DNA of 64,000 bases from Hyphochytrium catenoides (Eukaryota > Protista > Hyphochytriomycota). Positions 28,601 to 64,000 of this stretch are shown here, piece by piece; the stretch's first letter is position 1, and each line of letters begins with the position of its first letter. The stretch lies in NCBI GenBank assembly GCA_900088475.1, contig FLMG01000600.1:3388-67387 (forward strand). The letters run 5' to 3'. Position numbers and translations under genes: made by a program. The notes below the pieces were generated by a model. The model was given only the letters and a program-made list of their open reading frames with translations. It searched no databases and had not been told where the DNA came from.

Positions 28601-28852
28601 GATTTTATGGAAGCTTTTATCGCACGCGAAGTGGGTCGGGTAGAATATTTGAAGAGCCGTCAATCGGGAAAGACCGACCACGCGCCTCCCTTGGCTATAG
28701 ACAACAGAGAGCAAGTGGGTGGTCAAGAAAATAGTGGCACCACTCAGGAAGCTCTTCGTTTCAAGACTGATGAAGCATTAGAGGCTGAGTACCAAGAGTT
28801 GGAAGCACAGTTCCGACAGCAGTTCTCGGGAACGAATAAACAACAGCTATGA
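25642..28852 (+). CDS. DNAI3: Axonemal inner-arm dynein intermediate chain IC140/WDR63 (WD40); multi-exon
   Basis: N-terminal PFKLFPKSEIMEEIQKIGFYSDF, MEEALQQNETLDPF, ELRTFTDLVYSKNK..IDWHP, VLVWNFRDLIHPQFVLESP, IAGGSSTGQVVLWD, SHRRPVADIAWLP, FFCGTEEGELVYADW, SVGDWSFNLWKEG, WSPTRPSVL..DVWDLADQSHKP and LAVGDANGNLHILDLPRNL. Confidence 0.88.
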
Positions 28853-29115: not shown

Positions 29116-32100
29116 CTAGGATTGTAAGGCAGCCACCCGCCACTTACTATTGATGCAAATGGCAAGTTGCGATGTGGTGAAACGAAGCTCACCCTCCTCG
29201 ATACAGGAGTCTCCTGCGGTAACAGCGAGATTTACCGGGAAGACAGCGCCAACAACGTTCACAGAACCTTGAAGCCTTACTGAGCCTTCAAAGATTGCTG
29301 CACCGTCTACCCCCAAAGTTGTCGTTTCGATTGTGACCGAGGTCGTTGCAGAGAGACTTATGGTGGAAGATTCCAGTGCGACCCTGTTGCTGTCTAAGCT
29401 CATCACTTCCGAGGCGGATGTTCCCGAGTAACCCAGAATAGATCCAGTGCTCCCACCATCTCCGCTGCGTAGAATCACATTTCCTCCACTCGCGGTGCCC
29501 TCACCTGCCACGATGTTGACTGAGCCACCAGCAGACGAGTCTGAGGCTCCACCGATAATCTCTATGGATCCGCCAGGAGACGAGCCGGATGTACCCACAG
29601 AGAGCGTAATCTTACCAGCTGTGCCGGTTGCTGGCGAGGTAGCAAGGAAAAGGTTTCCACTTACGGTTGACAGCCTGCCAGTTGAAAGAGAAATGCTTCC
29701 GTCGGTTCCCGACAGAGCCATTTTCGCCGCTAGCTCCGTGGGGGTCGCGCCAGACGTTATCGTTACACTGCCATGGGTTGTGCTACCAAGCCCAGCGGTG
29801 ATGGCAATTGCTCCGCCCAGAGTCCCTCCTGCTCCTCCTGATAACATCACATCACCACCTTCTGATGATGCAGAACTGCCACCTACGAGTGTAATCTTTC
29901 CGGCCATGGATGACGCTTCGCCAGCGGCAATGGTCACGTTGCCTGAGGCCGAACCAGAACCGGTCGTCAGAGACATGGATCCACTAGTTGCTGCTGCAGA
30001 ACCTGTTGAGAACGTAATGGAACCCCCTGACGATGCAGAGTCGGGCGTGGAGATCATTACGGCCCCAGCGGCTCCAGAATCGCTACTACCTGATATGAGG
30101 GTAAGCAATCCTCCAGTAAGTGTGGTCGCGGCTCCGGCTTGGATGCGGATTTCACCACCCCGGGCTCCATCGCCACCTTTTACAGTCAGGGCTCCGCCCT
30201 CAGAACCTAATGCGGAAGTGCTACCTGCCTCTAACTCTAGGCTGCTGCCCGCGCTCGTTCCGCTGAGACCTACACTTACGGAAATGGTGCCTGCCGAGGT
30301 TGACCCTGTTCCCGTTGTCAGGGTTATCTGGCCCGACGATGCGCCCGAACTACTACCTGTGTTCAGATTCACATTGCCGGAAGCACCATCGCTGTTTCCA
30401 GTCCTGACAGCAACCTTTCCACTTGTGCCTGCTAAGTTGTTTGCTGACTTCACACTGACATCACCGCTGCCAGACCCTGATCCACCTTGGCCTGATATGA
30501 GGCCAAGCGAACCGCCACCCAGGATACCTGCTCCACCACTGACTTCTACTCCTCCGCCGAAGGCAGCGCTAGAACCACCAGCTGAGAGAGCTATTGCTCC
30601 CCCATTGGCTCCAGCGTTGCCAACACTAAGGAGAATGGAACCAGCACTTGTGCTTGAAGAACCAGTACGCAGACGAACAGACCCTGACGTGCCGGTCCCT
30701 GCGGAACTTCCGGTGGACAGCTCAATGGTTCCGCTCGTGCTATTGACTGCTGGTGGGGTTTGAATATTTACGGCTCCTGATTGGGCGCCGCTGCTGCCAC
30801 CAGAACTCACCGTCACACTTCCTCCGTTGGCGCCAAACCCGTTTCCTGCAACTAAACTAAGAAGACCACCAGCTTGAGCCATACTGGTCCCAAAAGCACT
30901 TCCACCACTGATAAATACGGATCCTGGTGCTTCAAGGTTGTCGGAAGTCCTACCACCTGTGAGGAAAATGTTCCCTCCTCCTCCATTCGTGCCTGTGCCA
31001 CCGCTCAATACGATACTTCCCGCATCTCCTCCAACCGCATTACCGGTGGAAAGATGTATTGATCCAGTAGATCCACCAGTGGACGACCCAGAAGCCATTT
31101 TCAAGAACCCCGTTGAGATCGAAGTTGCCGTAGAGGTCAATATATTGCCGCTTTGAAGCCCTCCAGCCCCAGCCTCCAGAATCACGTTTCCTCCAGTCCC
31201 CACTGGGGCGGACGCCGAGCTAAGTCTTATGTGTCCGGATTGCCCGGTTCCCGTGTGCGCACCTGCAAGAAGGCTGACGTCTCCTGAGATACTAGAAGCT
31301 GTTCCTGAGGAAATGGTGACGGCACCTGACGCTGCACCAAGGGATCCAGAATGCACTGCAACAGTTCCAGTATTTCCTGAAGTTGCCGCGTCGCCAGACT
31401 GGAGTCTTACGCCTCCAGTGACGATTTGGCCGCCACCTCCTTCAATAAGTATACCTCCTCCATTGCCCACTGATGCTCCCGCACGCAGAGTTATAGATCC
31501 ACTCATAGCGCCAGCACTGCTGCCGGCACTAATGGTAATATGTCCACTCACACCATCACTAGCGGCCCCACTTTCAAGATTCACAGCCCCTGAGCCCATT
31601 GATCCAACCCCAGATTTAATGTTAACGCCGCCCGTGTTGTCGGATTGCCCAGAGGAGACTAGAACAGACCCGCTGTATCCGCCACCCAGCTGACTGATGC
31701 CTGATGTAAGCCTAAGAGTTCCCCCAGTAGCCTGCTGGCCTGTACCGGCAGTCAACGCAAGCTCTCCACCTTCGTCTCCTCCTCCTGCTTGCAACAGTAG
31801 CTCGCCGCCCGCACTCAATGAGCTCGGACCAACACTTAAGGTTATTGAGCCAGCCGAAGAGGCGGCTCCCGACCCGATTACCAGTGAGCCTGAAGTACCA
31901 TCTTGCACCGCAGGACTACCAATAACTATAGCACCACTGACCGTACTGCCAAAGCCGCTGGATAGTAGCAAGGAGCCACCAGTGGCGGCTGTTCCAGCTG
32001 GCAGGGTGATAGATCCTCCTGCAGCACCCGCGCTAAGTTCCAGTTCACCGCTTGTGAGCCCATCACCTGCCTCCAGGTGAATGCTCCCAGCTACACCGGC

Positions 32101-35100
32101 AGCAGCATCGCCAGTCCTAAGAGATATAGAACCCGTATTTCCCGCAATAGAAGATCCTGAAGAGAGCACCATAGATCCACTGTTCCCAGCAGGGCCCGTG
32201 TCCGCCGTGGAGATAATAGTTGCTCCGCTTCCGGCTGAGCCGGCACCGCTCTGAAGGTTGACGTGACCTCCTAGACCTGGAGATCCTAGTCCGCCATTGA
32301 TTGTCACTCTGCCTCCCTCGTATCCGACACCAGCCTCAAAGGACAGGGGGCCGCCGTACGACGAAACAGGCGCTGGAGCTCCTGTGCCATCTTGCAGAGA
32401 GTTACCACCAAAGATGCTCACGCCAGCACCGTCGCCGGTGGCACTATAGCCGGCACTCATCGTTATCTGACCTGCGCTTCCCTGTGTGTAGGCATCGCCA
32501 GTTGCGATAAGGACGTTTCCGGTGTTGCCGACATTCGACTTCATCCTTGTCCTGATCGTTACGTGCCCAGTGCGCCCAGGTTCATCAGCCGAACCGCTTA
32601 GAAGATTGATATTACCCCCATTGCTACCAGCGCCGCCATCAACTTTAACATCACCACCACTGCCACCACTGCTCATACCCCCGTATAATCGTAGCTCCCC
32701 ACCGGTTGCGGAACCAATTCCAGATGACAACATGATATACCCTCCCACTCCGCTCTGGGACAGTCCCGCAGAAATTTCCACATGGCCTCCATGGCTCCCA
32801 TCACCTACCGATAGTTGAATAGTTCCAGCTTTGGCAGTTGCCGACTTTCCAGTTGCAAGTGACACGTCGCCGCTCGCTAGGTTGGGAGTGAAGCTTTGTC
32901 CCGTCAGCAGCTCGATAGACCCGCTCATGCCCCATGCTCCTCCATCAGCAGTGAGAAGGCTAATCATGCCGCTAGAGGTGGCACTTCCAGCTCCACTCAG
33001 AAGATGAACGGAGCCTCCTGTCGCTACATTGGATTGACCTCCTGCGATTTCTACTGATCCTCCACTCCCTCCAAAGAAGCTTGAGCTTGAGCCGCCCACA
33101 AGTGAGACCTCTCCGCCAACACCATTGAGCTCCCGACTTGCGTTGCCTGCAGCTAGAGATACGGACCCACTCAGGCTGTCCTTGCTACCACCAGCCTGCA
33201 GAAGAATGCTCCCGCCCTCACCCCACACCGAAGACCCAGAGGACACAATCACTGAGCCGGCATCAGAGGCAATAGAGTCACCAGTGCTTACAGTAAGCTC
33301 TCCACTAGTGCCAGATGAGCCACCTTCTGGGGTTCCAAGAGAGATGCTACCACTGCTGCCTGTCACACTTGATCCGCTCCTAATGGTTATCGTGCCTCCG
33401 CTGAAGCTGTCTTCCCCTGGACCTTTTGCAGCAGAGTCTCCAGCAGAAATAAGGATATGACCTCCACCGTAGCTACCCACTCCAGCATCCAATGTAATGT
33501 TACCAGTGGTTGAGTTGGACAATCCAGTTCCCAGTAGTATATTGCCAGACCCTCCCTTGACCCCTCCAATCCCGGTCTTTATCTCAATAAAACCAGATCC
33601 TCCCAGCGGAGCCCCGTTCGCGGTATTAATGGCAACATTCCCACTTTCACCACTATTAGCAGATCCACCACTTCCACTCGTTATCGAGATTGATCCCCCA
33701 CTTGAGCCTTCAGATGCGCTTCCTGCGACCAATCTCAAGTCCCCGCCAAAGGACCCAGAACCGGCATAAGCAAAGATTGATCCCCCTTTACCAGTGGCAC
33801 CAATGTTGTTACTAGCGAGAAGCTCGATGGGGTTTGCCTCCATGGATGAGTGGCTGTCTCCCATACCGAGTGCTATCCCTCCAGCCCTGCCCTCATTGCT
33901 GGAGCCCGTATATACGGAGATGCCCCCCGTATCTCCCCTAAGGGATGCCCCACTTGATAGTGACACCAACCCACTATCTCCTGAGCTAGCAAAACCAGTT
34001 CCAAGCGACACACTGCCGGAAACACTGCCAGTCCCACTTCTGAGCCCAAGCGTTCCTCCTTGGTCTTTAGCGGAGCCAGCTTCAAGCATGATCGATCCAC
34101 CGGGGGAGGAGTCAGTGGACCCGATACCACTAGTCCCAGCGGTAATCGCAATAGAGCCTCCTTGACCATGGGCTCTGGTGCCTTGAGAAGACCCCGCCGC
34201 AATTGAAACAGAACCACCCCGAGCCTGACCACTTAGCCCTGCGGACAAAACGATGTCTCCACCAGCTCTCTGAAGACTCCCACCGGCAGAAATGTTGAGA
34301 GCCCCTGCCGAATGCCTTATCGTTGACCCGGTCGCAACCGTCAGAGAACCACTACTCTGGTCACTATTACCAGTGACCATAGCTAAATGTCCGCTATTTG
34401 TGCCCAACCCGCTTTTGTTTGCGGTTCCTGTTTGAACCAATATAGCTCCGGAACCACTATGCGGCTCAGCATTTGAAGCCAATCCCGAGACCAGGGTGAT
34501 ATCCCCCCCTTTTTCAGTGCTGTTGCCGCCGCGCAGCTGAAGGCTTCCACCTCGCCCAGAGTACGGGTCGGAGGCGGACCCTGCANNNNNNNNNNNNNNN
34601 NNNNNNNNNNNNNNNNNNNNNNNNNNNNNATAATTGAAATGGAACCAGAAACGCCTCCAGACTTAGAATGGCCCGTCGCAATGGCAATATTTCCACTATC
34701 TCCCATATCCGAAGGACCGGTAGATAGCATCATAGCTCCGGAGGTTTTACTGTTTTCGGTATCTTGTGTCGACATTAGAATTGATCCACCGCCAGCTGCT
34801 CGGAGTTGCACATCACCACCCTGCCACATCTCAGAACCTGCTGAACTTATACGAACGGATCCACCACGATGCTTTCCACTACCGGAAGCTAAAGTGACGT
34901 CGCCACCAAGTCCTGTGGCAGAAGTGCCTGCAGACATCATGACATGACCTGCGACACCATCATAGGAATCGACTCCTCCCCCGGTACCAAACTCAGTACT
35001 CTTACCGGCTGTAAAGGCAATGTCACCAGCCTTCCCGCCGGCAGAGGCGTCCCCTGTGATGAGCGAGAGGTCACCGGTCCTTGATGCCCCATCAGAGAAC

Positions 35101-38100
35101 TCTTTGTCCCTTCCACCGCCTGTTTCGAGCTTTATGGATCCGCTCATGCCTCCGCGCTTGGGGTTTGCTGTTAACATATGAATGATTCCACTAACTGACG
35201 TCCGTCCTCCTCCACCGCTGTGAATTCCTATAGAGCCACCTTGAGACTGCTGGGAGCTACCAGCAGTGATGTCAACAAAGCCGCCACTACCACCACTTCT
35301 GCTGAAGCTAGATCCGGCGGTCAAAGAGACAGCGCCACCATGTCCGTTGAAGTCCTTGGTAGTGTTACCACCTGCGATGTCAATTGAACCACCTGAACCT
35401 TCCCTGCTCAGACCAGCTCCAAGGAGAACACCGCCAGCTTGACCATAACCGGATGTTCCCGAGTTGAGCTTAATGGAGCCTGACATCGACCCTAAGGCGT
35501 CGCCGGTACTGAGAACTAGATGACCTGTGCGGCTTTGTAGCGATGTCAAGGATTCATTCTGAGCTGCAGCGGTTCCAAGATAGAGCTCTCCACTATTTCC
35601 ACTAAGGCTTGACCCAGTTTTAAGTGATACACTGCCACCGGCGAAGTGCTCACTGCCGAGCTCATCTCCAATGGAGGCACCTGCCTCCACAAGTACTTGT
35701 CCTCCTCCTCCGCCTGCAGACCCTGCGCGGACAGTAATACCCCCACTGAGACTATGTGAAGATCCTGTAAGTATGCTCACTTCTCCCGAGGAGAGCTTGC
35801 CACCAGAGCCGGTTGAGAGATTTATACTTCCCGACCCTGCCCCATAAGGCGACCGGTTGTTTGCACTCAAGAGAAGCACATCCCCGCTGCTATCCTTTTG
35901 GCTTCCACCACTTTTGATGGATACTTGCCCTCCCTTTGACAATGATGTTGAACTAGTGCCTGCGGAGATCTCAAGACTCCCACCTTGGTTGCCGTCCCCG
36001 GCTCTTGCCAGCAGGAACCCACCCCTGCCTCCACTGATGTCTCCTGCGGACAGCTCAATAGAACCAGCTGCATTACCGTCTGCGTCTTCGCCAACGGCCT
36101 GACTCTTCCCCACGGCGAGCGTAATCGTGCCAGCCCTTGCTCCGACACTAGTACCAGTAGACATGACGATGCTGCCGGAAAAAGCGTTAGATGAGGAACC
36201 AGTTCTTATGCTTATTGACCCGGAATTGTCTGCCGAGGGAGCGGATTCAAGAGAGGCATTTCCGGATTGCCGTCCCATGCCGCTCTTGACTTCGACGGCA
36301 CCACCAAGATCCGCTGAGGATGATCCGGCCCTCAGGGTTAACCTACCACCTGACGCGCCAAAACGGCTCATAGTATTACCGGCTTTGATAGCAACGGACC
36401 CACCATGGCCACCATTAACCGAGTCTCCCCCGGAGAGAGTCACCCCGCCCCCAGTCTTCTCGTCGCTGCTACCACCCACCATAGTCAGATTGCCGGCTGC
36501 GGCTCTAACACTTGATCCGGTAGTCAGCCGGATCGTCCCACTTTGACTTTCAGCGTCACCACTTCCGATGGAAATTGCACCTGAAGACAATTTCTGACTA
36601 TGACCGGTGTTGAGGACTATTGATCCAGAGCCGAGAAGGTTACGTAAGTCTTCGCCGATCTCAGGGGTAGGGGACGAAGGAGTTACAATCCCCACATGAC
36701 CGCTTTCGTGCCGGGCTGACCTCCCGCTTTCAATCTTGACGTTACCACCGCTACTTCCATGGCTGTTTCCAGCTTGAAGCACAGTATCGCCTCCTTTCCC
36801 TGACATCTCGTTACTGGCGCTTCCAGCTAATAATTTCAGCCCTCCTCCTGATGCTTCTTTACCGGTCATTGAGCCACTTTGCATAATGATGTCACTGCCC
36901 AACCCTTCTACTCCTTGTCCCGCCACCACAGAGATGCTTCCTCCCGCCTGGCTCTTAGAAGCACCACTCAACAGATCCAATGTGGAACCACTGCCCTTCG
37001 AAATTGCATCTCCAGCCTTAATTCGAATTCCCGCTTCACTATTCTCGACAATACTTCCGCTAGAAGCCATAGTTTCAATGTCAATGCGCCCACTACCCTG
37101 TGCACCGGATGCGGCTTGCAAATAGATGTTGCCTCCCACACCGACCATAGGCCCCGCAGAGCCACTGCTGATGCGGACATCTCCTCCTCTTGCTTCTGAG
37201 CTATTTCCAGCTCTAAGCAGAATATTTCCACCCCTATTGTCGCCTGCTTCCACAGACACATCGCCATAACTCGATTTCATGTGGATATCTCCACCCTTGC
37301 CGGACGGCAGATTTTGGTAGCCCATACCGTCACCAAGTACCCCGGCTTCGATCGTTATGCTACCTGCAAGAGCAGGACCTTTCTCGATACCTCCTGTCTG
37401 AAGTGCCAGCGACCCCGAGGCCCGCTGGCTCTTTCCAGAGGCCAGAATGACATCCCCGCTCACGTCTGCCTCGCCAGATCGCAGGGCCAGTGAACCGGAT
37501 CTCGCCTCTCTTGAAGAACCAGTTCCGAGATGCAAATAGCCAGAAGTTCCAAGTCGAGTATTGCCAGAGTGCAAGGTTACATTACCGCTNNNNNNNNNNN
37601 NNNNNNNNNNNNNNNNNNNNNNNNCGCCCGCCACTTATCGAAATCGCGCCACCATTTGAGTTAGCAGAGGAGCCACCAGTGAGCGCTACTCCTCCAGCTG
37701 TAAGTGAGGAACTTATAGCATTTGCTCCACTGAGCTTGATAGAGCCTCCGCGGACTGCTCCTACACCAGACCGGATGGTCACGTTTCCTCCATTTCCGTC
37801 CAACGACTCTCCAGAAGAGATGCTTACGTCTCCACTTGAGCCATAAGACGCAGAACCAGAGAAAATGCGGATATCACCAGAGTTACCGGACGCGCTGTGG
37901 TTTCCTGATCCCACTGATACATCACCACTGCTTCCTTTATAGGACGAGGACAAGCTATTCCCACTCTGTAGTAAAATTGCTCCTCCATCACCTTCGGTCG
38001 CTGAGCCTGCTGAAAGCAAGACATGACCCCCGTTTGAAGAAGCCATAGAGGACCTCGTAGATCCAGCCTGAATGACGATCCCACCGGCTGGGGAAGGATT

Positions 38101-53100: not shown

Positions 53101-56100
53101 TCCCGCCTGTAGCTCGATAGGGGCCCCAACGGCGGCCCCTGTTCCAGAACCCGCGGATATTGAAACTTTACCAGCTAACCCTTTTCGACTGTACCCAGTA
53201 CTCAGATTGATAGGACCACTTCGTCCTAGAGCCGAAGCACCGGAATAAAGGCTTATCGCACCACTAGATGCTTGGTGACCGGCTACATTGGGTGATATGA
53301 TATCCACACCCCCGCTTTGGCCAGAAAGACTAGTGCCGGATGTGACCATCACTTTGCCACCAAGCCCATCCCCGCTTGACGAGCCTGCCATTAGGTGGAC
53401 ATTACCACCTCCGGAAAGTTCAGATGACGAGAGGGATGAGCCTGCTTTCAGTAGCAAATCTCCCCCAGACGAAGTTCCTCCCATCGGTGAAAATGAAGAA
53501 CCTGCGGAGATCAATATTCTTCCAACTTCGCCCCCATATTCGCCAGTCCTGCCAGCGGATATCACTATGGAACCGCTTGCTTTAGCGTTGCCTGTCTGAA
53601 TATGGAGCGAGCCACTTTCCCCTTGGCTGCTGTTGCCGGTGGCAAGCGTGAGTGCACCTGTCTTACCATGAGCTGAACTTTGACCGTTGTCTGAGGATTT
53701 GACAGTAATGTCACCTGAATGCATATCAGAAATACCGCTCTGGACCTTGACTTCACCGGAAGCGCCGTGTCCCGAAGGAGCGGCACCACTAAATATGCTT
53801 ACTGACCCTGACTGACCAGGACCAAGGATGGGGCCGCTGCCGAGCCAGATAGTACCGCTATCGCCACCTGTCGATGTTCCAGTAGTTATATCAATGATGC
53901 CACCAGCACCCGTACTTGCGGAGCCACTTCTCAATTCCACCTTTCCTCCTGAACCTGACATCCCTGATGTGTTACCAGCCAGGATTTCAATAGACCCTCC
54001 AGCAGAGTCTTTGGCAGTCATAGAACCAGCCTCAACCTTCACACTAGCTCCGACGCCTGTGACACCATTACCGGCCTTTATATCAACCAAGCCACCGGAG
54101 CCCTTTGCACTCGATCCAGTTTCAAGGGAGATTGAACCTGCTGCATCCGTTTGAGACATGGAGGAAGACACACGAATACTCCCACTGCTGCCTTTTGCTC
54201 CGCTTCGTCCTGTAGAGACTGTAATATCTCCACTGTTATCAGCGTTCGAAGTTCCACTGCTCAAATACAGGTGACCACCTGCCCCATGTGCGCTAGAGCC
54301 ACTCTCGAGCTTAAGTGATCCTCCTGCGACTGAGGAAAGTGACGAGCCACCTAAGACACTTATGGTGCCCGGGATGCCTGTGGCGGAAGGACCTGCGCTC
54401 AGGCTGATGGATCCACTAGAGACTGCAGGCCCGGAAGAGATGGATATGTCCCCACTTTGAGCAGAGTGACTGGAACCTGTACGGATCCCAAGTTGGCCAC
54501 TGTTCCCACGATCTGCAGAATACGTATAGACCAGTACAGCTCCGCTGTCGCTCTTGCTTGCCCCTAAAGGAGCGGAGCCTGATCCTATGGAGACAATTCC
54601 GCTACTAGTTCCGAGTGAAGTTGCTCCGGATGCTATTTGAACATCGCCGCCCTTGCCACCGCTGGCGTCACCTGCAGATAGGACTATGTCTCCACCAGCG
54701 GAAGCGGTTGAAGATGATATGCTGGACCCAGCTCTCAGCGAGATATTGCTCCCAGACACTCCAGCCATCGTTGATATCACCGATGCGGCAGTCACGGCGA
54801 TGCTTCCGGCTCCTCTCCTTGCGGCCCCATGGTGGACACCAGACTTAATATCTATAGATCCTGCCTCAAGACTATCACCTGTCGCAATCGCAATAGATCC
54901 CGCCGTCCCTGCCATACTGTTTCCTGTCTTTATGGATGCGGAGCCTGAAGATCCGTGAGCGGTAGGGTCCAAGTTAGAGGTTGACGCTTCGAATATTCCT
55001 GTTCCGCTCTTGGATGCCCCACTCGAGAGGCGGATAGATCCTGACAGTCCCTCTGATGTTTGGCCGCTGAAAAGATGAATTGAGCCGCTCTTGCCATCAA
55101 GTGTAACGGCAGACGCTGTGCCTACGAAGATTGAGCCACTTTCACCTTTCCCATTGGACAGTCCAGTCATCACATGCACGGATCCGCCATGAGCACCTGA
55201 TCCGCCAGACAGGGCTAGATTTCCTCCCGTGCTCCTGTCACCGGAGACTCCACCGCCAGAGATCTTAACGTTGCCGCCTTCAGCTTCTTCCCATAACATA
55301 CCTCCCGCAGCAATGTCCACGGAGCCGCCCTTGCCACTGCGTCCTTCTCCAACTTCTAGGTATATGGAACCGCCTGATGCAGACAAACTAGATCCTGTCT
55401 GAAGTCGAAGGCTTCCTGCATTACCTTTAGTGGCTGTCAAAGTGGCAACTCGAATGTCACCACCTCGTGCACCACCATAGCCAGTTAGAAGGTCTAAAGA
55501 TCCGCTTTGTCCGTCTTCGGAGGCACCAGCTATAATGCTCACGGAGCCACCGGTCCCGGAGTCGCTTGCTCCGCTTTGCAGTCGCAAAAAGCCCCCAACT
55601 CCCTCCTTAGAGGCCCCTGACCCTAACAGTATATGCCCACCACTCCCTCTAGGTGCTGCGCCTCCCAACAACTCCAGCGAACCGCTGCCTTCTTCTCCCA
55701 GAGCAGAGCCAGAAGAAATTGTAACTTCTCCACTTTTGCCAACTCCACTCGAACCGGACCCGATAAGTACGCCTCCGCTATGACCAACCCCCTCTCCCAT
55801 GACGGACCCGGTAGAAAGGGTCATTTTGCCAGATGGGCTTGTTCCACCTTTTGAGGTTACGGCGACAGCTCCACTGATACCACCATTTAGCCCTCCATTG
55901 CCAGACACAATATTGATAGCACCTCCCGACCCAGAAAAAGCACCTCCTCCAGAGAGAGATATGGTGCCTCCCCTGGAGGAGTCAGAAGATGAAGATGTGA
56001 ACCCAGCTTCTAATGTGACGTTGCCGCCATTTTGCTTTGACAATGTTGAACTCAAGGACCCTGCCGAGAGGTGCACACTGGCTGCATCAGCATCCGTTCC

Positions 56101-59100
56101 GACGGAGTTTCCACCTGCGATGAAAACTGAGCCCGCCATACCGCCAGCGCCCGTCATAAATTGCAGAGATCCTGTCGATCCTCTGTAGTTTGTTCCTGTC
56201 GAAAGAGCTACGCTACCCGACGAATGTTCAGCCTCTTCGTCTCTTAAGTTGGTCATAGGGGAACTCATGAGGAGCACATTCCCACTTCCGTAAGCAGAGC
56301 TCCCAGTGGATAGCATTATGTCGCCTGAAACACCACGAGAAGAACTGCCAGTGGAAAGCTCAATTCTACCGCTGTTCTTCTGGCTGTTTCCTGTCCTAAT
56401 CGTTGCTCTACCACTATTGCCAGTGATGGCTTTTCCAGTGACTAGTAGAATTGATCCTCCAGAGTGCCCGTTCCTGCTCCAACCAGCAGTGACGTTCACC
56501 GACCCTCCAGCACCTGCTTCGGAGGCTCCTGCGGAGACCTTGACTAGGCCCCCAGCAAAGTCACGTTTAGAGTACGTCGATCCAGCATTTAGGTCTATTG
56601 ATCCGCCTGCAGCGTCACCTGACGTCCCAACCTGCATGTTGATTGAACCTGCCCCTCCATGGTCACTCATTCCGGTTCTTAGGTACAGCGATCCGCTGTA
56701 ACCAGCTTTTGCGTCGCCCGTTACCATGGAAACGAAGCCACCCATGCTTCCTCCGACCCCTGCATTTACCGTGACATTCCCCCCGCCAGTACTCTCACTT
56801 GCCCCTGCTTCCAACAGAAGGGAGCCGCCCGACAAATTTCTTGAGCCCGAAGCTCCAGCCTTCAAACGGATTGATCCTCCACCCAAGCCCACGGCTAGTT
56901 CAATAGACCCGCTACTTCCTGAATGGGAGTGACCGGTGGCCATAGAGATATGACCCGTTTGTCCGTAACCGCTTTCGTCTGACCGGAGAGAGATGTCTCC
57001 GCTGCCAGTGCCATCATCACTGATGGATTTGGCTGTGTTCAGCGTGAGAGACCCACTTCTCTGTTTTTCAGAAAAGCCACTGCTAATGGTGACATTCCCC
57101 GCTCGACTGCTACCGCTCCGTCCCCCGATGAGCCTGATGGAACCCCCAGGTAGTGCTGAAGAATCGCCACCCACTATATCCACAGCGCCTCCAGCTTGGT
57201 TGGAGCCGTGGATTAGGACTGAGGGTTTTGTGTTGAAGGAGGAGGTCACTCCCACTCCTGCTGACAGCACCACGGCTCCTGCCTGACCTTGTCTGACGTC
57301 TCCTGANNNNNNNNNNNNNNNNNNNNNNNNNNNNNNNNNNNGAAGCAACTCTCACATGGCCTGCAGTTCCCTTCCCAGTAGAAGCTGCTCCCGCACTGAG
57401 CTCGACGTGATTACCTGAGCTGGCATTCTCCTCGGCCACAGCCGCCCCTGCCGAAAAAGTAATAGCACCACCAGCGCGCCTTCCAATACCGGTGGAAACA
57501 ACAACTGACCCAGAGCTCGAGGTTGCACTGGCACCAGTCCGAAGCTTGACGGTTCCCGAGAAGGATGTTCTGGCATCGTTTGTGGCCACTGAAATGTTAC
57601 CACTTTCGAGACCACTCCCAGTCGCCAAAACAACATTACCAGATGCACCTCCCACTCTCTCACCTGTGGTTATGCTAGCATCGCCGCCGGAACCGGTACT
57701 GCCTTGATCCTCGCCTGGCGTCTCCAGACGGAGCTCGCCACTCGATTGTGGTCCTTCACCCGTAATGACGCGAATAGCGCCCCCAACAGCGTCCTTACTT
57801 GAACCAGCCTCCAGTGTAACGGTCCCAGCATTGCCTGCTCTTGATGATCCAGCAGCGAGCCTGATGGGGCCCGCGCTTCCATCTCCTTCGGCGGAGCCAC
57901 TGATCAAATTTAAGGATCCGCTTGAGCCTGGACCTGCAGCTGCTCCACTCTTTAGAGTTATTGGCCCTGACGCCAGGCCGGAGCTCCCTGTAGCAAGGGT
58001 GATCATGCCAGTACTATCACCCCAAGATCTCCCTGTTTGAACTGCGATTTGCCCTGTAGAGTGACCCTCCGAGGTATCAATATTGACATTACCTGTCACT
58101 GAGTCCACCGAAGAACCAGATATTAGCCTCAGATTGCCACCGGAGCCAGTGACGCTTTGGCCTCCTTGCATGATCACAGTACCTCCATTTGACCACTGTG
58201 AAGAACCGGCCGAAAGAGCAATATCACCGCCAAAACTATTTGCTGGAGAATACGCAGTCCCATCATTCGCACCAGCTTTGAGGGAAATCGAGGCACCTCT
58301 CCTCCCCTCTCGTGTCAACCCTCCCTCAACCACGATGTCTCCAGCCCCTAATCCGTCCCCTGACGCTATCACTACTTTTCCGGTGGTCCCAGACGAAGAC
58401 TTTCCGGATTGCAAGGTAACTTCGCCAGTAGTGGCATCCTTTAAGGACACTGATCCGCTGGCAAGCATCATTGCGCCACTCCCAATGCTTGAGCCAGATC
58501 CAGAGAATATTTTCACCAACCCGCCGAGTCTATCAGCATCTCCTGCGTACATGGCAAGGCTGCCCCCGGTTGATGCAGGGTTTGAACCGAATCCGCCCAT
58601 GATCTTTACCTCACCACCTCCCCCTTCACCGTGAGTGTGCTTTCCAGCAATAAGATGGATGGAACCCCCAGTGCTCTCAGAGGAGGTTTCGGCTCTCCGG
58701 CTTGTTCCGGGTTGGACTATAATAGAGCCGGCGGCCCCTTGACGTGCGTCGCCTGACGTCAGAAGGAACTGACCGGAGTTCGTGCCGGAACCCGTCACGG
58801 TGCCTGTTCCCATAACGACTCTACCAGATGGTCCTCCTCCGGACGGTGATGATGTCGTTATACTCAAACTGCCGCTACTCCCCTTGGAGTGTCCTGTGGA
58901 GAGGGTGACATCACCGGAGACTTCGGATGCTTGCCCAGAAGACGCTATTACATTTCCACTTTTACGGTCGGCATCAGCACTCGCGAGAATTAGATGGCCG
59001 CTGTGCCCTCCACGCCCGGTCTCAACCACCACTGAGCCGCCAATTCCAGTAAAGCTTGACGCCGAGCCTGCCGTGATGTTTACGTCTCCCGCTAATAAGT

Positions 59101-62100
59101 CTGAGTCTGAGTGCGAGGAGCCTCCCACAACCCTGATAGCTCCAGGTTTTCCCTTGTCGCCAAAAGCGGAGCCGGCTTCGACGTACACAGATCCTGCTTC
59201 ACCTGATGCTACGAAGCCACTACGAAGCACAAGGGACCCCGAGTTCCTGTCTTTAGCTGTTACGTCACCTGACTGAAGTGAAACATTTCCGCTTGAGGTG
59301 CCCTCCGTCGACAAGGATCTTACGTCCACCCCTCCGGGACTATTCTTACCGCTTCCTGATCGTACCGAGACAAGTCCTCCACTGCCTTCCTCTGATTCGC
59401 CACTTGCGATAGTCATATGACCTCCGGTATTGGAGGCACTGCGTCCTGCTGTCACTAATATTGATCCGCCCTTTTGGTTCACCGAGAATCCAGCAGTTAT
59501 GGAAATTGAACCTAGTCCAATCTCATTATCTGTCCTTGCTGACTTTCCTTCGATCGCAATCCTTCCTCCTCTTTCAGCGTCTGCTCCCGATAGGGAACCC
59601 GAGGAGAGCACCACAGTACCTGAGATGCCCTCTTTGGTACTGCCACTTCCCATCGAGAGATTCCCGGATTGACCAAACCCTGCGTCCCCAGAACGAACCA
59701 TCACAGATCCGGACGATGATGGACTTGCTCCCGAAGATGTCGAGAGGCGAATATCACCACTGACATCTGAGCCTGCTCCTGACGTTAGCGTCAAGGAACC
59801 GCCCCGGCCAGTCGCATGTCCACCCGATACAACCACCTGACCCCCCATGGACTGTGCCTCAGATGCGGATCCTGCCTGAAGAATGAGCCTACCACCATAC
59901 CCGACGGAGGATCCTGCCAATACCCTAATCTCCCCACCAGATGCCTCACTGCTGCCTGAAGAGCCTGCTATGGCTTCAATATGACCCGGCCGCCCTAATT
60001 CCGTCGAGCCTACGCGCAGCCGTATAGTTCCCGTGGAGCTGTCTGCTGCTTGGCCACTGCTAAGTGCTATATCGCCAGAGTTGCCAACCCCCCCAACATC
60101 AGATGTTGATATGTCGATGGCTCCACTGTCCCCGTCCTTTCTGCTAAGTCCGCTTGATAGTAAGATATTTCCGCTTTTGCGGGGAGCGGAACCTGTAGAT
60201 ATCTCAAAAGAGCCACTTGAATGTGATCCAGAGTTTGTGCGGACCTTAATATACCCGCTGGTCTGATGTCCACTCCCACTCTGTATAAGGACAGATCCTC
60301 CAATCGCGTCAAAGGATTTACCAGCTGTAACGTTAAGGGCACCCCCTTCTCCTTCTGTCGATGAACCCCCCTGCAACGCGATTGCGCCTCCTGATGTTCC
60401 CTTTCCTTCTGCTAGTCCACCAACGAACATAAGTTGTCCAACGCGGCGTCCTGGTGAGGTTCCAACGCTTAGTTGAATTGACCCACTTTCACCGTTGAGT
60501 CCTGAAGGTCCCGAACTAATTTTTATGCTTCCAGTATCACCCATATCTCCTTTTCCAGTTTTAAGGTGAATATCTCCACTTTCGGCTTCCCCGCCATCGC
60601 CTGATGCAAGGGTTAGAGAACCTCCCTTGCCAGCCATAGAAGTCCCTGCACCCAGATATATGTTTCCTCCAATGGCTGTGGTTGCATTGCCAGCATTGAT
60701 GTCTACAGATCCTCCTTGAAGCCCTGACCCAGCAAAGATTGCAACTGCACCTCCCGCTGGACCTAAGCCACTGGAACCGGCATTTAAGGCTACCGTGCCC
60801 GGAGTTCCGCCATCCCCTGTCGCTATTCTCACTGGTCCACTTGAGCCTCCTCTTATGTCGCTTCCGGTAGCTATCTCCATGCCACCGGAACCACCAACCT
60901 GAGAAGTTCCAGAAGTTAAGGTCAAAGCACCGCTTCTATGTGAAGCTGAGCCACCTGAAGTTGTCACAGCAATGTCGCCAGTGGAAGCCATGCTAGATCC
61001 CCTGCCGGAAACAAGAAGCAGTGCTCCTCCTTTGCCATTTACTGCTTCACCTGCAGAAAGGGATAGAGTGCCTCCATTTACGATGGTCGAGGTCGCCAGC
61101 GCGCGACCTGCACTGATGGTTGCATTGCCGCCTGCAAAGCCTGAGCCAGCCTGCAAATCAAGGTGCCCACCTCTGACGTTTGGACCGCCACTACTACCAC
61201 TTTGAAGTACAATGGAACCTCCTGCTGAGCTCTCCGAGCTTCCGGCTGAAAGGGCGATAGAACCTCCAGCTCCCATCTTTGTGGAGTTCCCCGCCCCCAA
61301 GGTGACGGAACCAGAATCCATTTGAGCATTTGAGGTTCGGATACTTATGGCGCCCGATTGCTGTTCCGTTGCACTGCCGCTCACAATCTTGATCTTTCCT
61401 GATTGCAGACCATCTCCCGTTGCTAGTCGCAGGTTTCCAGACTTGCTGGCAGCTTGGGATGGACTAGAGATCCATAAGTCACCGCTCCGCACTTTACCTG
61501 ACCCACTTTCAATGCGAGTGGAGCCACCCGTGCTTCCTGCGCTACTCCCAGCCCTTAAATCTATCGAACCGCCATCACCACCATCTTCATCCATGGTCGA
61601 GCCAGCAGAGATGATGGTTGCACCTCCAATTGCACTGGGTCCTACCATTGTCCCTGCTGATACAACAATTGAACCTCCATTACCCAAAACGCCCTGACCG
61701 ACAGTAAGGGAAACTCCACCTCCCTCTTGCGACGATGAAGATCCAGAAGCGATGAGGATGGCTCCAGTGCTGGAGCTCGAATGACTAGACACAATGGTTA
61801 CATTGCCGCTCTCTCCTAGTAGGGTCCCTCCCAGCCCAGATTGCAGTAAAAGGCGACCGCCTTTTCCATGCTTAGACATACCGCCAAGCACCCTGACAGT
61901 ACCTGCATGGCTGCTTTCACTTTGACCACCATAAATGGTTGCATCGCCACCATCCGCTGAGCCAGAGGATCCTGGAATAATATCTACGCTACCACCGTGT
62001 CCTTCCCGGGACCTACCAGCCGCAATAGCTACGTCTGCGCCTTGTTCGTACCCCAAACCTCCGCTGAGCGTTATTTCACCTGCGACTCCGAGGGAAGCGT

Positions 62101-64000
62101 CACCCGTCGCAAGTTTGAGCTGGCCGCTCTTACCGGCATGAGAGCTACCGGTGACAAGGAGTATCGTTCCACTGGGGCTAATCCCTTCACTAATCTGCGA
62201 AGCAGAACTTAGAATGACGTGACCGCTGCCGCTTTCAGCAGAACCGCTACCAGATTGCAGCTGCACAGAACCGCCTAGCTGACCATGAGCACTTTTGCCA
62301 CCCAAAAGCGTGACGTTACCACCTATTCCCGTGGGTGAGTCCCCAGCTACCAAACCCACGCTGCCTCCTATAGCTCCAGCAGCGCGAACAGCACCTGCTG
62401 AGAGAAGAATATCGCCACCTCTCGTACGAGGTGAGTGCAGACCAATACTTTCACCACCCATCACCACAACAGATCCTCCCTGACTTTCAGAGGAACTGCC
62501 AGCCGCGACAGTGATGTTGCCAGATCTCTGCCGCTCAGAGGAACCCGTGGCAAGATTGATCGTTCCGGACCCCCCTGGAGTGGAAGAAGTAGAGATTTGT
62601 ATAGATCCTGTGTTGCTAGGTGACAGTCCGGAGGTAACGTTCACTGTACCCGAAGCAAGAGATTTAGCTACTCCTGAGGATATCGTGATGTTACCACTGT
62701 CCTGAGTCCCGTCAGCGGTTGATATTTGGATTTCACCTGATATCTTGCCGCCACCCGATCTCAACTTAACCTTCCCGCCTTCCAGATAAGAGCCGTCTCC
62801 ACCACCAATATTTATTTCGCCACCCCTTCCGCCCCCTCCAGAACCGCTGACAGTATGTTTTGTGGCTCCTGCGTCAATGAAGATGCTACCGCCTGCATCC
62901 CCGTCAGGGCTGGTTGCACTACCTGACCCTGCTGAAAGTCTTATTTGGCCCCCCGCCGCCATAGCTTTGCCAACGCTCAAAATAATGCTGCCACTTCCAG
63001 ATTGCTTGGAAGATCCACTTTGGAGCATAAGGTTACCAGATGACGATACAGCCCCAATGGTACCTATCTCAATGGAGCCACTCCGTCCTTCCACAAAGTT
63101 TGAGCCTGATCGGAGTTTAATTTGCCCGGAAGTTCCCTTTTCAGAGCCACCTGACGCAATAACAACATTACCGCCATCACCTTGCTCACTCTCTCCAGCC
63201 ATCATGGTCAAATCACCTCCTGTTCCTAGGCGGGAGGAACCACCACGTACAGCCACGTCGCCGCCACCTCCAAGTCGGGCTTCTGATGTCGATTCTCCAC
63301 CCTCAATGTGCACAGAGCCCCCTACTAGGGGTCCTGCAGCATCAGAAGTACCAGCTGATATGGTGACGTTCCCAGCCTCCGCCGCAGCCCCTTGGACGTT
63401 GCCAGTTGCAAGAAGCAAGCTGCCGCTCTGCTTGCCCATGCTCTTTGCTGTTGCAATTGTCATCCTACCGGTGAATCCTTCCAGACCACCCTCCCCAGTC
63501 TTGATATCTACGTCCCCACTGCTTCCAGCTGAGCTATATCCCGATTCGATCCGGATCGCTCCACCTACACCCTCACTAGAGGAATGATTTCCAGCCTGCA
63601 GAGTTACATTACCTCCCCTAGCCCACTTTCCTCTACTACGTATAAGGCTGGAGCCCGCGGACATAAGAAGACTTCCTCCGACGCCATTTGGAGAGGCGAT
63701 GGCCCCTGCCGATATGGCAACATCCGCTCCGGTCTGAGGCGAAATACGCTCCGCAGACGAACCACTTGATAGACCCCCTGCGATGTAGATGCCACCGCTG
63801 GACTCTGCCGTTTCGCTCGAACCGCTTGTCAGTAAAATGGAACCCGATGGCCCCTTCCTAGATGCCCCCGACGACAGTACTAACGATCCAGAAACTCCAT
63901 TGGCTAGCGCTGGGGACGAACCAAGGATCACGCGACCGGTAGACCTGCCCAGAGAGGAGCCGCTCTGCAGGAACACATCGCCAGAGGAAGAGGAAGTAGA
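29116..64000 (-). CDS. Giant (>11,600 aa, 5' end beyond window) Gly/Ser-rich repeat protein, predicted beta-helical/solenoid fibre
   Basis: Four stop-free segments (57342-64000, 37625-57306, 34630-37589, 29116-34585) share the same repeat, (G/S)G-x-hydrophobic-x-hydrophobic-x-(A/S/T)G-x-(S/A/G). They are separated only by N gaps of 35, 35 and 44 nt. The frame is open at the window edge and the stop is at 29116. Confidence 0.85.
34586..34629. other. Assembly gap (44 N)
   Basis: N run. A true length of 42 or 45 nt would keep the giant ORF in frame. Confidence 0.95.
37590..37624. other. Assembly gap (35 N)
   Basis: N run. A true length of 34 or 37 nt would keep the frame. Confidence 0.95.
57307..57341. 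other. Assembly gap (35 N)
   Basis: N run. A true length of 34 or 37 nt would keep the frame. Confidence 0.95.

What the first reader, a model, noticed from the sequence alone, without database searches (positions are those of the whole stretch)
29116..64000. Giant >11,600-aa Gly/Ser beta-strand repeat protein: candidate sub-micron extracellular fibre
Seen: ~35 kb of one strand encodes roughly 700 imperfect ~15-17 aa units such as GGSIELRAGSS, SGDVSISTGSS and AGSITLSVG. Each has a 5-6 residue alternating hydrophobic strand flanked by Gly turns and a variable loop. The DNA is not tandemly identical, and the frame is still open at the window edge, so the protein is larger still. Established: strand-Gly-turn repeats of this kind build beta-solenoids and triple beta-helices (phage fibres and spikes, giant bacterial adhesins) with ~0.48 nm rise per rung. 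Inference: one unit per rung in a trimer gives a rod of at least ~350 nm, or ~120-175 nm as a single-chain solenoid. It could be a surface filament, adhesion or motility fibre, flagellar-hair filament or extrusome thread of a flagellated protist. I know of no characterised eukaryotic protein with this architecture.
Basis: partly seen in the sequence, partly recalled or inferred. Interest (0 to 1): 0.92.

Follow-up and report, generated by a model that had tools for sequence, protein, structure and literature searches.

The report
Giant tail-fibre-like repeat protein gene
One intronless gene of at least 35 kb in a protist (probably a stramenopile) encodes about 11,660 residues made almost wholly of a 15-residue Gly/Ser strand repeat; relatives in water moulds carry the self-cleaving trimerising domain of phage tail fibres, so it is most likely the core of a very long three-chain surface fibril.

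Summary
On the minus strand, 29119-64000 is open, stops at 29116-29118, and still runs at the window edge. Frame changes occur only at the three N gaps. Independent DNA contigs close two gaps (45 nt, not 44; 127 nt, not 35), and both corrections restore one frame. The third gap was not tested. The 11,587 readable residues are about 600 recognisable, roughly 750 in all, degenerate 15-residue (7+8) units. Tiles are about 31% alike, and there is no DNA tandem repeat. Polymorphisms give pN/pS 0.17, so the frame is under selection.

No Pfam, PHROG, NCBIfam or PDB sequence match was found. A search of 1.8 billion proteins found 180 relatives with the same 15-residue period, including proteins of Aphanomyces, Lagenidium and Phytophthora. 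One starts with a signal-peptide-like sequence, and 19 of 156 carry Peptidase_S74 (ICA). The window's protein has no S74. It ends in a roughly 100-residue cap holding its only two cysteines; Lagenidium shares the cap motif.

The closest precedent is the cryo-EM TLP-12 glycofibril: giant alveolate proteins with 12-residue repeats, a triple beta-helix and an ICA domain. The trimeric fold, glycosylation, expression and cellular role are inferred, not shown. The scan also noted S74-bearing fibre genes elsewhere in this genome; these notes are unchecked.

The parts
57342..64000 (-). Repeat block A: 2,219 residues, open to the window edge, so the 5' end and N-terminus lie outside the window
   Evidence: no stop; 120 HMM units
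57307..57341 (.). Assembly gap 3 (35 N). Continuity was not tested. The frames on its two sides differ by 2 mod 3.
   Evidence: The same repeat is open up to both edges.
37625..57306 (-). Repeat block B: 6,560 residues
   Evidence: 335 HMM units; an old duplication signal at about 3,000 residues offset
37590..37624 (.). Assembly gap 2. It is really 127 nt, not 35, and the correction puts B and C in one frame.
   Evidence: X1 and X2 contigs skip 35 with 127 letters between; frame arithmetic, and the 48 visible letters are open and repeat-like.
34630..37589 (-). Repeat block C: 986 residues
34586..34629 (.). Assembly gap 1. It is really 45 nt (15 codons, one unit), not 44, and the correction puts C and D in one frame.
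   Evidence: one base put in behind 34585 in X1 and X2 contigs that span the gap..
29410..34585 (-). Repeat block D: about 1,725 residues of repeat
29119..29409 (-). C-terminal non-repeat cap of about 97 residues. Longer Gly-poor strands are followed by a C-x3-G-x-L-x-F ... C-x4-W-R-V-A motif. The protein's only two Cys are at 29203-29205 and 29155-29157.
   Evidence: low Gly/Ser, Cys positions; the motif is shared with Lagenidium giganteum P0026; language-model neighbours are phage trimeric fibre modules, as a lead only
29116..29118 (-). Stop codon of the giant gene
   Evidence: No S74 domain was found in any frame of the window downstream of it.

Best explanation
This is one real, intronless, protein-coding gene. 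Its product has at least about 11,660 residues and about 1.08 MDa per chain. It is a member of an uncharacterised stramenopile family of tail-fibre-like shaft proteins.

Proposed structure (inferred):
- Each 15-residue unit is G-S-[IV]-x-[LI]-x-[SAT]-G-S-S-x(3-8)-G.
- A unit provides one clearly hydrophobic short beta-strand and one small-residue strand or loop, each bounded by a corner Gly.
- Three parallel chains intertwine into a triple beta-helix of triangular cross-section, as in phage tailspike stalks, the MYRF stalk and the TLP-12 glycofibril.
- Each unit probably spans two sides of the triangle.
- The roughly 750 units in the window would then make an unbranched rod of about 0.6-0.7 um, or about 0.35 um if a unit spans one side only.

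Proposed assembly (inferred):
- The chain enters the secretory pathway.
- The many exposed Ser and Thr residues are probably O-glycosylated, giving a glycan-sheathed fibril on the cell surface or released from it.
- Relatives use a self-cleaving C-terminal or internal Peptidase_S74 (ICA) domain to nucleate and register the trimer. This protein lacks that domain.
- It ends instead in a cap of about 100 residues with two Cys and a Trp. I propose that this cap is the non-cleaved trimerisation and registration nucleus, from which the shaft zips up towards the N-terminus.

Shown here: gene continuity across two of the three gaps, the repeat anatomy, selection on the frame, homology to S74-bearing and signal-peptide-bearing relatives, and absence of S74 in this protein.

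Inferred: the trimeric fold, glycosylation, secretion, the role of the cap, the length and the cellular role.
For: Gene reality:
- About 35 kb is open in one strand.
- Two gaps close in frame when independent contigs are laid over them.
- Among 37 polymorphic or assembly differences, 25 are synonymous and 12 are not. The synonymous-site fraction is 0.26, giving pN/pS 0.17 and p = 2e-7.
- Strong GC skew is confined to the gene.

Repeat: a 15-residue period made of 7+8.

Family:
- 180 relatives have E <= 1e-3; the best has E = 2e-31.
- None of 50 composition-matched shuffles scored at all.
- All 10 relatives checked have the same 14-15 / 7 periodicity.
- Named members are Aphanomyces euteiches, Lagenidium giganteum and Phytophthora fragariae.

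Link to the trimeric fibre fold:
- Peptidase_S74 is found in P0001 (three copies), P0006, P0020 and P0011 by Pfam, and in 19 of 156 fetched relatives by a local profile.
- P0001 residues 55-450, repeat plus S74, match the tail-fibre family phrog_1980 at 1e-18.
- The best PDB profile hit is the beta-helix of a gp5/VgrG spike, E = 2e-4, with two 8-residue strands aligned per unit.
- The four best ESM Atlas shape matches are an oomycete cluster, a 'Peptidase S74' cluster, a diatom cluster and a phage S74 cluster at TM 0.46-0.47. The next match is at 0.30.

Secretion:
- The Phytophthora fragment P0165 begins with a hydrophobic signal-like peptide followed by a head of about 370 residues.
- The only two Cys sit 16 residues apart in the cap.

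Precedent: the TLP-12 cryo-EM structure and its giant repeat proteins with ICA.
Against: - No direct evidence for a trimer. The tools fold monomers only.
- AlphaFold gave pLDDT 44 without an alignment; that model stacked one strand per unit as a single chain.
- With an alignment of internal repeats it gave pLDDT 63 and almost no sheet.
- Foldseek found nothing in the PDB.
- The window's own tiles hit no Pfam, PHROG or NCBIfam family.
- The protein itself has no S74 domain, so the S74 argument rests on homology of the shaft alone.
- The resemblance of the cap to Lagenidium is at motif level only; BLASTP is not significant.
- No RNA run was listed, so expression is unproven.
- The N-terminus, and hence a signal peptide, lies outside the window.
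- Gap 3 is untested.
- The PDB hit and the Atlas matches are weak (E = 2e-4; TM below 0.5).
Confidence: 0.6

Rival explanations
1. It is a single-chain beta-solenoid or beta-roll. Each 15-residue unit is one coil with about 0.48 nm rise, like the 14-residue YadA-head roll or the 15-residue insect antifreeze helices. The monomeric rod would be about 0.35 um long and might associate side by side.
For: The single-sequence AlphaFold model placed one hydrogen-bonded strand every 15 residues. The pattern (two inward hydrophobics, small residues, Gly turns at positions 0 and 7) resembles two-sided beta-rolls; this comparison is from my own knowledge.
Against: That model has pLDDT 44. With an alignment the intrachain sheets vanish. 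No YadA_head, Hep_Hag or other solenoid family hit appeared at E <= 1. Relatives pair this shaft with a domain whose known role is trimer folding. A coil holding two large and two small side chains is a very thin core for a monomer.
Confidence: 0.15
2. It is an intrinsically disordered, mucin-like Gly/Ser-rich secreted protein, such as a gel, adhesive or coat matrix. The 15-residue period would reflect only glycosylation or cross-linking sites.
For: Gly + Ser make up 42% of residues. There is no confident fold and no family hit.
Against: The periodicity of the alternating hydrophobic dyad appears without assuming any motif. pN/pS is 0.17. The order-dependent similarity to relatives is lost on shuffling. 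The association with S74 also argues against it. These features fit a folded repeat.
Confidence: 0.12
3. It is a fibre gene of an integrated virus (a polinton-like or giant virus) rather than a cellular structural gene.
For: Polinton-like viruses of protists commonly encode modular fibre proteins with Peptidase_S74 (PMC12220804). The gene is intronless, whereas an earlier unchecked scan note (s1-350097) describes a neighbouring gene as intron-rich. The nearest neighbours of the cap by language-model features are phage proteins.
Against: No viral hallmark was seen. GC3 and codon use are not far from the neighbours. At 35 kb it is as long as a whole polinton-like virus. No viral or phage relative was found. 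Ancient viral ancestry of the family remains possible.
Confidence: 0.05
4. It is not a functional gene: an assembly artefact, or a decaying repeat array that happens to be open.
For: There are three assembly gaps with wrong lengths, and no RNA run was listed.
Against: A 19.7-kb stretch without a stop cannot arise by chance. Contigs from two separate samples agree. Synonymous changes are in sevenfold excess per site. The DNA is not repetitive.
Confidence: 0.03

Closest known systems
TLP-12 glycofibril and its candidate giant proteins in Amoebophrya and other alveolates (bioRxiv 10.1101/2025.09.30.679562)
   Same: Both are giant protist proteins of more than 10,000 residues made of many hundreds of short Gly/Ser-marked repeats. 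[quoted passage not shown] The link to the ICA / Peptidase_S74 domain is present there, and here in the relatives. Ser follows the corner Gly in both.
   Different: The repeat here is 15 residues (7+8) with an I/V-x-L/I dyad, not the 12-residue GSxxSx7. The lineage is stramenopile, not alveolate. This protein has no ICA domain and ends in a two-Cys cap. Glycosylation and the trimer are unproven here.
Phage tailspike and tail-fibre proteins with a C-terminal intramolecular chaperone (Peptidase_S74; K1F endosialidase type), and eukaryotic MYRF
   Same: Relatives of the window's shaft carry bona fide S74 domains directly after the repeat. One of them matches a phage tail-fibre PHROG across both repeat and S74.
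   Different: The window's protein has no S74 domain. Its shaft is one to two orders of magnitude longer than the phage or MYRF stalks. Its tiles hit no phage family or phage genome directly.
gp5 / VgrG cell-puncturing spike beta-helix (PDB 9gtr chain q)
   Same: It is the only solved structure found by the repeat profile (E = 2e-4). It is a triple-stranded beta-helix of 8-residue strand-plus-Gly units, and two of these align to one 15-residue unit.
   Different: The score is marginal. In gp5 both strands are hydrophobic, whereas here only one in two is. No OB-fold or lysozyme parts are present.
Adenovirus and reovirus fibre shaft (triple beta-spiral, 15-residue pseudo-repeat)
   Same: The repeat length is the same, and both are trimeric fibre shafts (from my own knowledge of van Raaij et al. 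1999).
   Different: The adenovirus unit has two hydrophobic mini-strands and a conserved Pro/Gly turn, whereas this unit has one hydrophobic dyad. No Adeno_shaft Pfam hit appeared at E <= 1.
Stramenopile mastigoneme proteins (Sig1 / Ocm / PnMas, with EGF-like Cys-rich domains)
   Same: Both are extracellular hair proteins of the same group of organisms. An unchecked scan note reports a paralogue in this genome with an EGF head on a similar shaft (s1-347894).
   Different: There are no EGF or Cys-rich domains in the 11,587 residues seen, which hold only two Cys in all. No sequence similarity was tested or found.

Membership tests
Uncharacterised stramenopile 15-residue Gly/Ser shaft family (oomycete hypothetical proteins) | Significant, order-dependent sequence similarity of the repeat region | tested here: met
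   Phmmer E-values run from 2e-31 to 1e-11 against P0001, P0006 (Aphanomyces), P0165 (Phytophthora) and P0026 (Lagenidium). None of 50 shuffled controls was reported.
Uncharacterised stramenopile 15-residue Gly/Ser shaft family (oomycete hypothetical proteins) | Same 15-residue period built from 7+8 Gly spacing | tested here: met
   The autocorrelation maximum is at lag 15 (14 in two cases), with Gly lags of 7, 8 and 15, in the window and in all 10 relatives checked.
Uncharacterised stramenopile 15-residue Gly/Ser shaft family (oomycete hypothetical proteins) | Shared C-terminal two-Cys / Trp cap | tested here: inconclusive
   The motif is seen in Lagenidium P0026 at about residues 673-705, but BLASTP is not significant and no other fetched relative has it.
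ICA / Peptidase_S74 triple-beta-helix fibre proteins (phage tailspikes, MYRF) | A Peptidase_S74 / ICA domain following the beta-helical stalk | tested here: not met
   No S74 was found in the 11,587 residues or in any frame of the 64-kb window, using a family-specific profile at maximum sensitivity. Pfam found nothing on tiles or on the C-terminus. The feature is met in 19 relatives.
ICA / Peptidase_S74 triple-beta-helix fibre proteins (phage tailspikes, MYRF) | Homotrimeric intertwined triple beta-helix | not testable with these tools
   Only monomer prediction is available, with pLDDT 44 and 63.
ICA / Peptidase_S74 triple-beta-helix fibre proteins (phage tailspikes, MYRF) | Autoproteolytic release of the chaperone at a Ser-Lys dyad | not testable with these tools
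   There is no S74 domain here. In the relatives the S-D-x-R-x-K site is present, but cleavage needs an experiment.
TLP-12-type glycofibril core proteins | Dodecapeptide GSxxSx7 repeat | tested here: not met
   The period is 15, not 12, and the consensus differs.
TLP-12-type glycofibril core proteins | Giant chain with many hundreds of repeats | tested here: met
   At least 11,587 residues, with 604 units recognised and roughly 750 estimated.
TLP-12-type glycofibril core proteins | Dense O-glycan shell on repeat Ser/Thr | not testable with these tools
   Ser is 19.6% and Thr 7.0% of residues, and Ser is favoured just after both corner Gly. This shows potential only.
Adenovirus-type triple beta-spiral shaft | 15-residue unit with two hydrophobic strands and a conserved Gly/Pro turn; Adeno_shaft profile | tested here: not met
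   No Pfam hit at E <= 1 on 4,500 residues. The unit logo shows only one hydrophobic dyad.
Trimeric autotransporter YadA-like head / Hep_Hag repeats | Match to the YadA_head or Hep_Hag profiles | tested here: not met
   No Pfam hit at E <= 1 and no NCBIfam hit.

The most novel reading that the evidence does not exclude
Zoosporic stramenopiles make micrometre-scale surface or flagellar hairs from single giant tail-fibre-like chains. Candidates include the still unidentified fine hairs or terminal filaments of mastigonemes, or cyst-coat fibrils. This member would have replaced the phage-type self-cleaving ICA chaperone with a permanent disulfide-stapled C-terminal cap. That would be a second, unexplored way to register a roughly 0.7-um triple beta-helix of about 750 non-identical rungs.
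Probability: 0.15. Interest if true: 0.8.

Novelty: new variant of a known kind. Interest (0 to 1): 0.6.

Why it matters
Giant protist proteins built as phage-like triple beta-helices have only just been seen, in TLP-12 (2025), and only in alveolates, with unknown function.

This locus shows a second family with a different repeat in stramenopiles, including plant and animal pathogenic oomycetes. It gives a concrete gene for which the fibril, its glycans and its cellular place can be sought.

It also poses a folding question: how does a chain of more than 11,000 residues and about 750 degenerate rungs stay in register without the ICA chaperone that its relatives use?

On the practical side, it shows that such genes are systematically broken or mis-modelled in assemblies. 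Examples are contig ends, wrong gap sizes and chimeric gene models, as in Lagenidium.

Tried and rejected
Searches and tests that gave nothing:
- Pfam on five tiles and on the C-terminus: nothing, apart from noise above E = 0.05.
- PHROGs and NCBIfam on the window's tiles: nothing.
- PDB by sequence with a single 800-residue query: nothing.
- Foldseek against the PDB with the pLDDT-63 model: nothing.
- TRF: no DNA tandem repeat.
- RNA runs: none was listed, so expression could not be examined.
- The search for related loci with P0001:1-470 found no viral relative.
- tblastn of a tile against 50,697 phage genomes: no match.
- tblastn of the cap: one hit at E = 0.06, not pursued.
- A paper search for the two assembly accessions that hold P0001 and P0003 gave only chance matches, so those organisms remain unnamed.
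- The Lagenidium orthologue could not supply an N-terminus, because its gene runs off a contig end.
- The FAN1 neighbour has no relative above 32% identity, so the organism could not be named from it.

Readings rejected:
- Adenovirus-type beta-spiral and YadA-type head, because the unit logo differs and no profile hit appeared.
- A splice to a downstream S74 exon, because no S74 exists in any frame of the window.

Full report
1. THE OBSERVATION

The feature is on the minus strand. Stop-to-stop scanning gives four very long open stretches: 57113-64000, 37585-57351, 34386-37634 and 29119-34662. They lie in frames 0, 1, 2 and 1, and each ends inside or just past one of the three N runs. Trimmed to the gaps they hold 2219 + 6560 + 986 + 1822 = 11,587 residues without a stop. 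The frame is still open at base 64000, and the stop codon is at 29116-29118.

The scan's program asked that the gaps be tested first. Logan contigs of two DNA runs (X1 and X2, from two samples of one study) were laid on 33000-38900.
- They bridge gap 34586-34629 with one extra base, so it is 45 nt, which is 15 codons or one repeat unit.
- They bridge gap 37590-37624 with 127 letters instead of 35.
- These corrections (+1, and +92 = +2 mod 3) are exactly what puts blocks D/C and C/B into a single frame.
- The 30 and 18 gap-2 letters printed as loose ends translate in frame into more repeat, without a stop.
- The third gap (57307-57341) could not be tested. It needs +2 mod 3. The same repeat is open up to both of its edges, which leaves no room for a gene boundary.

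2. IS IT A GENE?

The contigs differ from the window at 37 places. Twenty-five of these are synonymous in the proposed frame and 12 are not. Only 26% of sites are synonymous, so pN/pS is 0.17 and the binomial p is 2e-7. The frame is therefore under purifying selection. A GC skew of about -0.17 begins exactly at the gene. All synonymous Gly and Ser codons are used about evenly, and TRF finds no DNA tandem array. No RNA run was listed, so transcription is unproven.

3. ANATOMY

Measured without any motif assumption, hydrophobic residues autocorrelate at lag 15 (0.23) and lag 30, and Gly at lags 7 and 15. The unit logo is G-S-[IV]-x-[LI]-x-[SAT]-G-S-[SAG]-x(3-8)-G.
- The strict core matches 605 times with modal spacing 15. 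A unit HMM finds 604 units. Spacings of 28-35 mark degenerate units lying between them, so the total is roughly 750.
- There is no non-repeat island anywhere except the last 100 residues or so.
- Every 300-residue tile is 27-41% identical to every other.
- Tile pairs offset by about 3,000 residues score higher than the rest: 124.5 against 108 bits, n = 28. This points to an old large internal duplication.
- Composition is G 22.6%, S 19.6%, A 9.6% and T 7.0%. There are just two Cys, 16 residues apart in the terminal cap. The mass is 1.08 MDa.

4. RELATIVES

Tiles hit nothing in Pfam, PHROGs, NCBIfam or PDB sequences. An exhaustive phmmer search of 1.84 billion cluster representatives with the last 800 residues found 180 proteins at E <= 1e-3, the best at 2e-31.
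- The similarity is order-dependent. None of 50 composition-preserving shuffles of ten hits was reported at all.
- All ten hits show the same 14-15 / 7 periodicity.
- Named members are from Aphanomyces euteiches (P0006), Lagenidium giganteum (P0026) and Phytophthora fragariae (P0165). All are annotated only as hypothetical.
- An earlier scan note calls this genome a soil stramenopile (s1-333883). The oomycete relatives fit that. The FAN1 neighbour has no relative above 32% identity, so the lineage is isolated.

Pfam finds Peptidase_S74, the intramolecular chaperone of endosialidase (ICA), three times in P0001 and once each in P0006, P0020 and P0011. A profile built from these finds it in 19 of the 156 fetched relatives, always embedded in or following the repeat. 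P0001 residues 55-450, repeat plus S74, match the phage tail-fibre family phrog_1980 at 1e-18. P0009 joins the shaft to three Kringle domains. P0165 starts with a signal-peptide-like sequence and a head of about 370 residues before the repeats. In two other assemblies (loci L001 and L002), consecutive long ORFs in shifting frames are all full of units. Giant genes of this family therefore exist elsewhere too.

5. WHAT THE WINDOW'S PROTEIN LACKS AND HAS

The S74 profile, run with all filters off, finds nothing in the 11,587 residues or in any frame of the whole 64-kb window. A spliced downstream S74 exon is thus excluded within the window.

The protein ends instead in about 97 Gly-poor residues with longer strands, followed by C-x3-G-x-L-x-F ... 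C-x4-W-R-V-A. The Lagenidium protein ends its repeat part with the same kind of cap, after which its gene model runs into a transportin, a chimeric model. BLASTP does not make this significant, so it is a motif-level match. Language-model neighbours of the cap are phage proteins with trimeric modules (PTL_trimer, T4 gp9/10 N, Mtd_N) at scores of 0.85-0.89, which is a lead only.

6. FOLD

ICA domains are established folding and trimerisation nuclei for triple beta-helices in phage tailspikes and in MYRF (PMC8326128 and PMC3742443, listed). Shaft homology to ICA-bearing proteins is therefore the main argument for an intertwined homotrimer.

Weak independent support comes from two results.
- A profile of 69 in-register tiles has as its only meaningful PDB hit the triple beta-helix of a gp5/VgrG spike (9gtr_q, E = 2e-4), with two 8-residue strands aligned per 15-residue unit.
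- The shape of the alignment-based AlphaFold model is closest to ESM Atlas clusters from Oomycota, a 'Peptidase S74' cluster, Bacillariophyta and an S74 phage cluster (TM 0.46-0.47). The next match is at 0.30.

AlphaFold itself is inconclusive. It gave pLDDT 44 with one stacked strand per unit without an alignment. It gave pLDDT 63 with almost no intrachain sheet when given the alignment. The second result is what a monomer model of an intertwined trimer tends to look like, but it also fits disorder. Foldseek against the PDB found nothing.

7. COMPARISON WITH WHAT IS KNOWN

The closest precedent is TLP-12, a pond glycofibril solved by cryo-EM (bioRxiv 10.1101/2025.09.30.679562).
- Three chains of 12-residue GSxxSx7 repeats intertwine into a triangular triple beta-helix.
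- Each repeat spans two sides of the triangle.
- O-glycans sit on Ser2 and Ser5.
- Eighteen repeats span 14 nm.
- Candidate genes are giant Amoebophrya proteins, for example 19,853 residues with 1,263 repeats, with a C-terminal ICA domain. About 150 candidates were found in alveolates, none with a known function.

The present protein shares the giant size, the short Gly/Ser-marked repeat, the Ser after the corner Gly and, through its relatives, the ICA link. It differs in repeat length and consensus, in lineage, and in lacking the ICA domain. Polinton-like viruses of protists also encode S74 fibre proteins of up to 3.9k residues (PMC12220804). Here, however, the flanks are host genes, and no viral relative was found. 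Paper searches found nothing on this family in oomycetes.

8. MECHANISM AND DIMENSIONS (INFERENCE)

Gly occurs at both position 0 and position 7. If each marks a corner, one unit spans two sides, as in TLP-12. Using the TLP-12 figure of 0.78 nm per two-strand repeat, or the canonical 0.48 nm per strand, about 750 units give about 0.58-0.72 um. With one side per unit the length is about 0.35 um.

The chain would enter the ER; the signal peptide is seen only in a relative. It would trimerise from the C-terminal cap, and the two Cys suggest a disulfide and hence an oxidising compartment. It would then zip up towards the N-terminus, be O-glycosylated, and be displayed or shed as a thin hair. No evidence here discriminates which structure it forms, whether coat fibril, flagellar fine hair, mastigoneme terminal filament or adhesive thread.

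9. VERDICT

Its novelty claim is weakened by TLP-12. I rate this a new variant of a known kind: a stramenopile 15-residue family, and an ICA-less member with a distinct cap. Unchecked scan notes report further fibre genes with S74 and with PSI or EGF heads elsewhere in this genome (s1-352531, s1-345822, s1-343211, s1-347894), so this is probably one of an expanded family. I did not verify those notes.

Noticed in passing
window 34586-34629 and 37590-37624: The scaffold's N runs have wrong lengths. Contigs give 45 nt for the first and 127 nt for the second. This alone causes the apparent frameshifts.
   Followed up: yes
window 33642-33781, 34219-34339, 37251-37301: Paired short contigs, each at about half depth and differing by 3-5 SNPs, look like allelic bubbles. 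This suggests a heterozygous diploid, or two haplotypes, in both samples.
   Followed up: partly
window ~37627-57306 (block B) and neighbours: Tile pairs offset by about 3,000 residues score clearly above background (124.5 against 108 bits). Lesser peaks appear at offsets of 900, 2,100 and 5,100 residues. This indicates ancient large internal duplications under the uniform 31% identity.
   Followed up: partly
L001 5179-18413 (GCA_024449685.1, JAANST010975565.1): A gene of at least 13 kb from the same family has three complete S74/ICA domains spaced about 370 residues apart in the middle of repeat blocks. If each one cleaves, this is a polyprotein releasing several separate trimeric fibre segments. 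A tubulin-tyrosine-ligase gene lies next to it, so it is eukaryotic.
   Followed up: partly
P0009 (Logan contig, 1,410 aa): The same 15-residue shaft is fused to three Kringle domains, a different head on the same stalk.
   Followed up: no
L003 121-5591 (Lagenidium giganteum NSDO01000391.1), protein P0026 / DAZ94475.1: The public gene model is chimeric. It joins the C-terminal 700 residues of a shaft protein, truncated by the contig end, to a transportin-3/importin-13-like protein.
   Followed up: partly
window 12126-14006 (-): This is a FAN1-type nuclease ORF (VRR_NUC plus FAN1 TPR in its relatives). Its best relative among 5.8 billion proteins is only 32% identical, so the organism has no close sequenced kin in that collection.
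   Followed up: partly
window 27221-28852 (+): A WD-repeat protein, read as a dynein intermediate chain and not verified here, converges tail-to-tail on the giant gene. Only about 260 bp separate the two 3' ends.
   Followed up: no
P0012 (RYE85057.1): A shaft-plus-S74 protein is labelled 'tail fiber domain-containing protein' in a Methanosarcinales MAG on a 3.5-kb contig. It is either a mis-binned eukaryotic or viral fragment, or a sign that the family reaches beyond eukaryotes.
   Followed up: no
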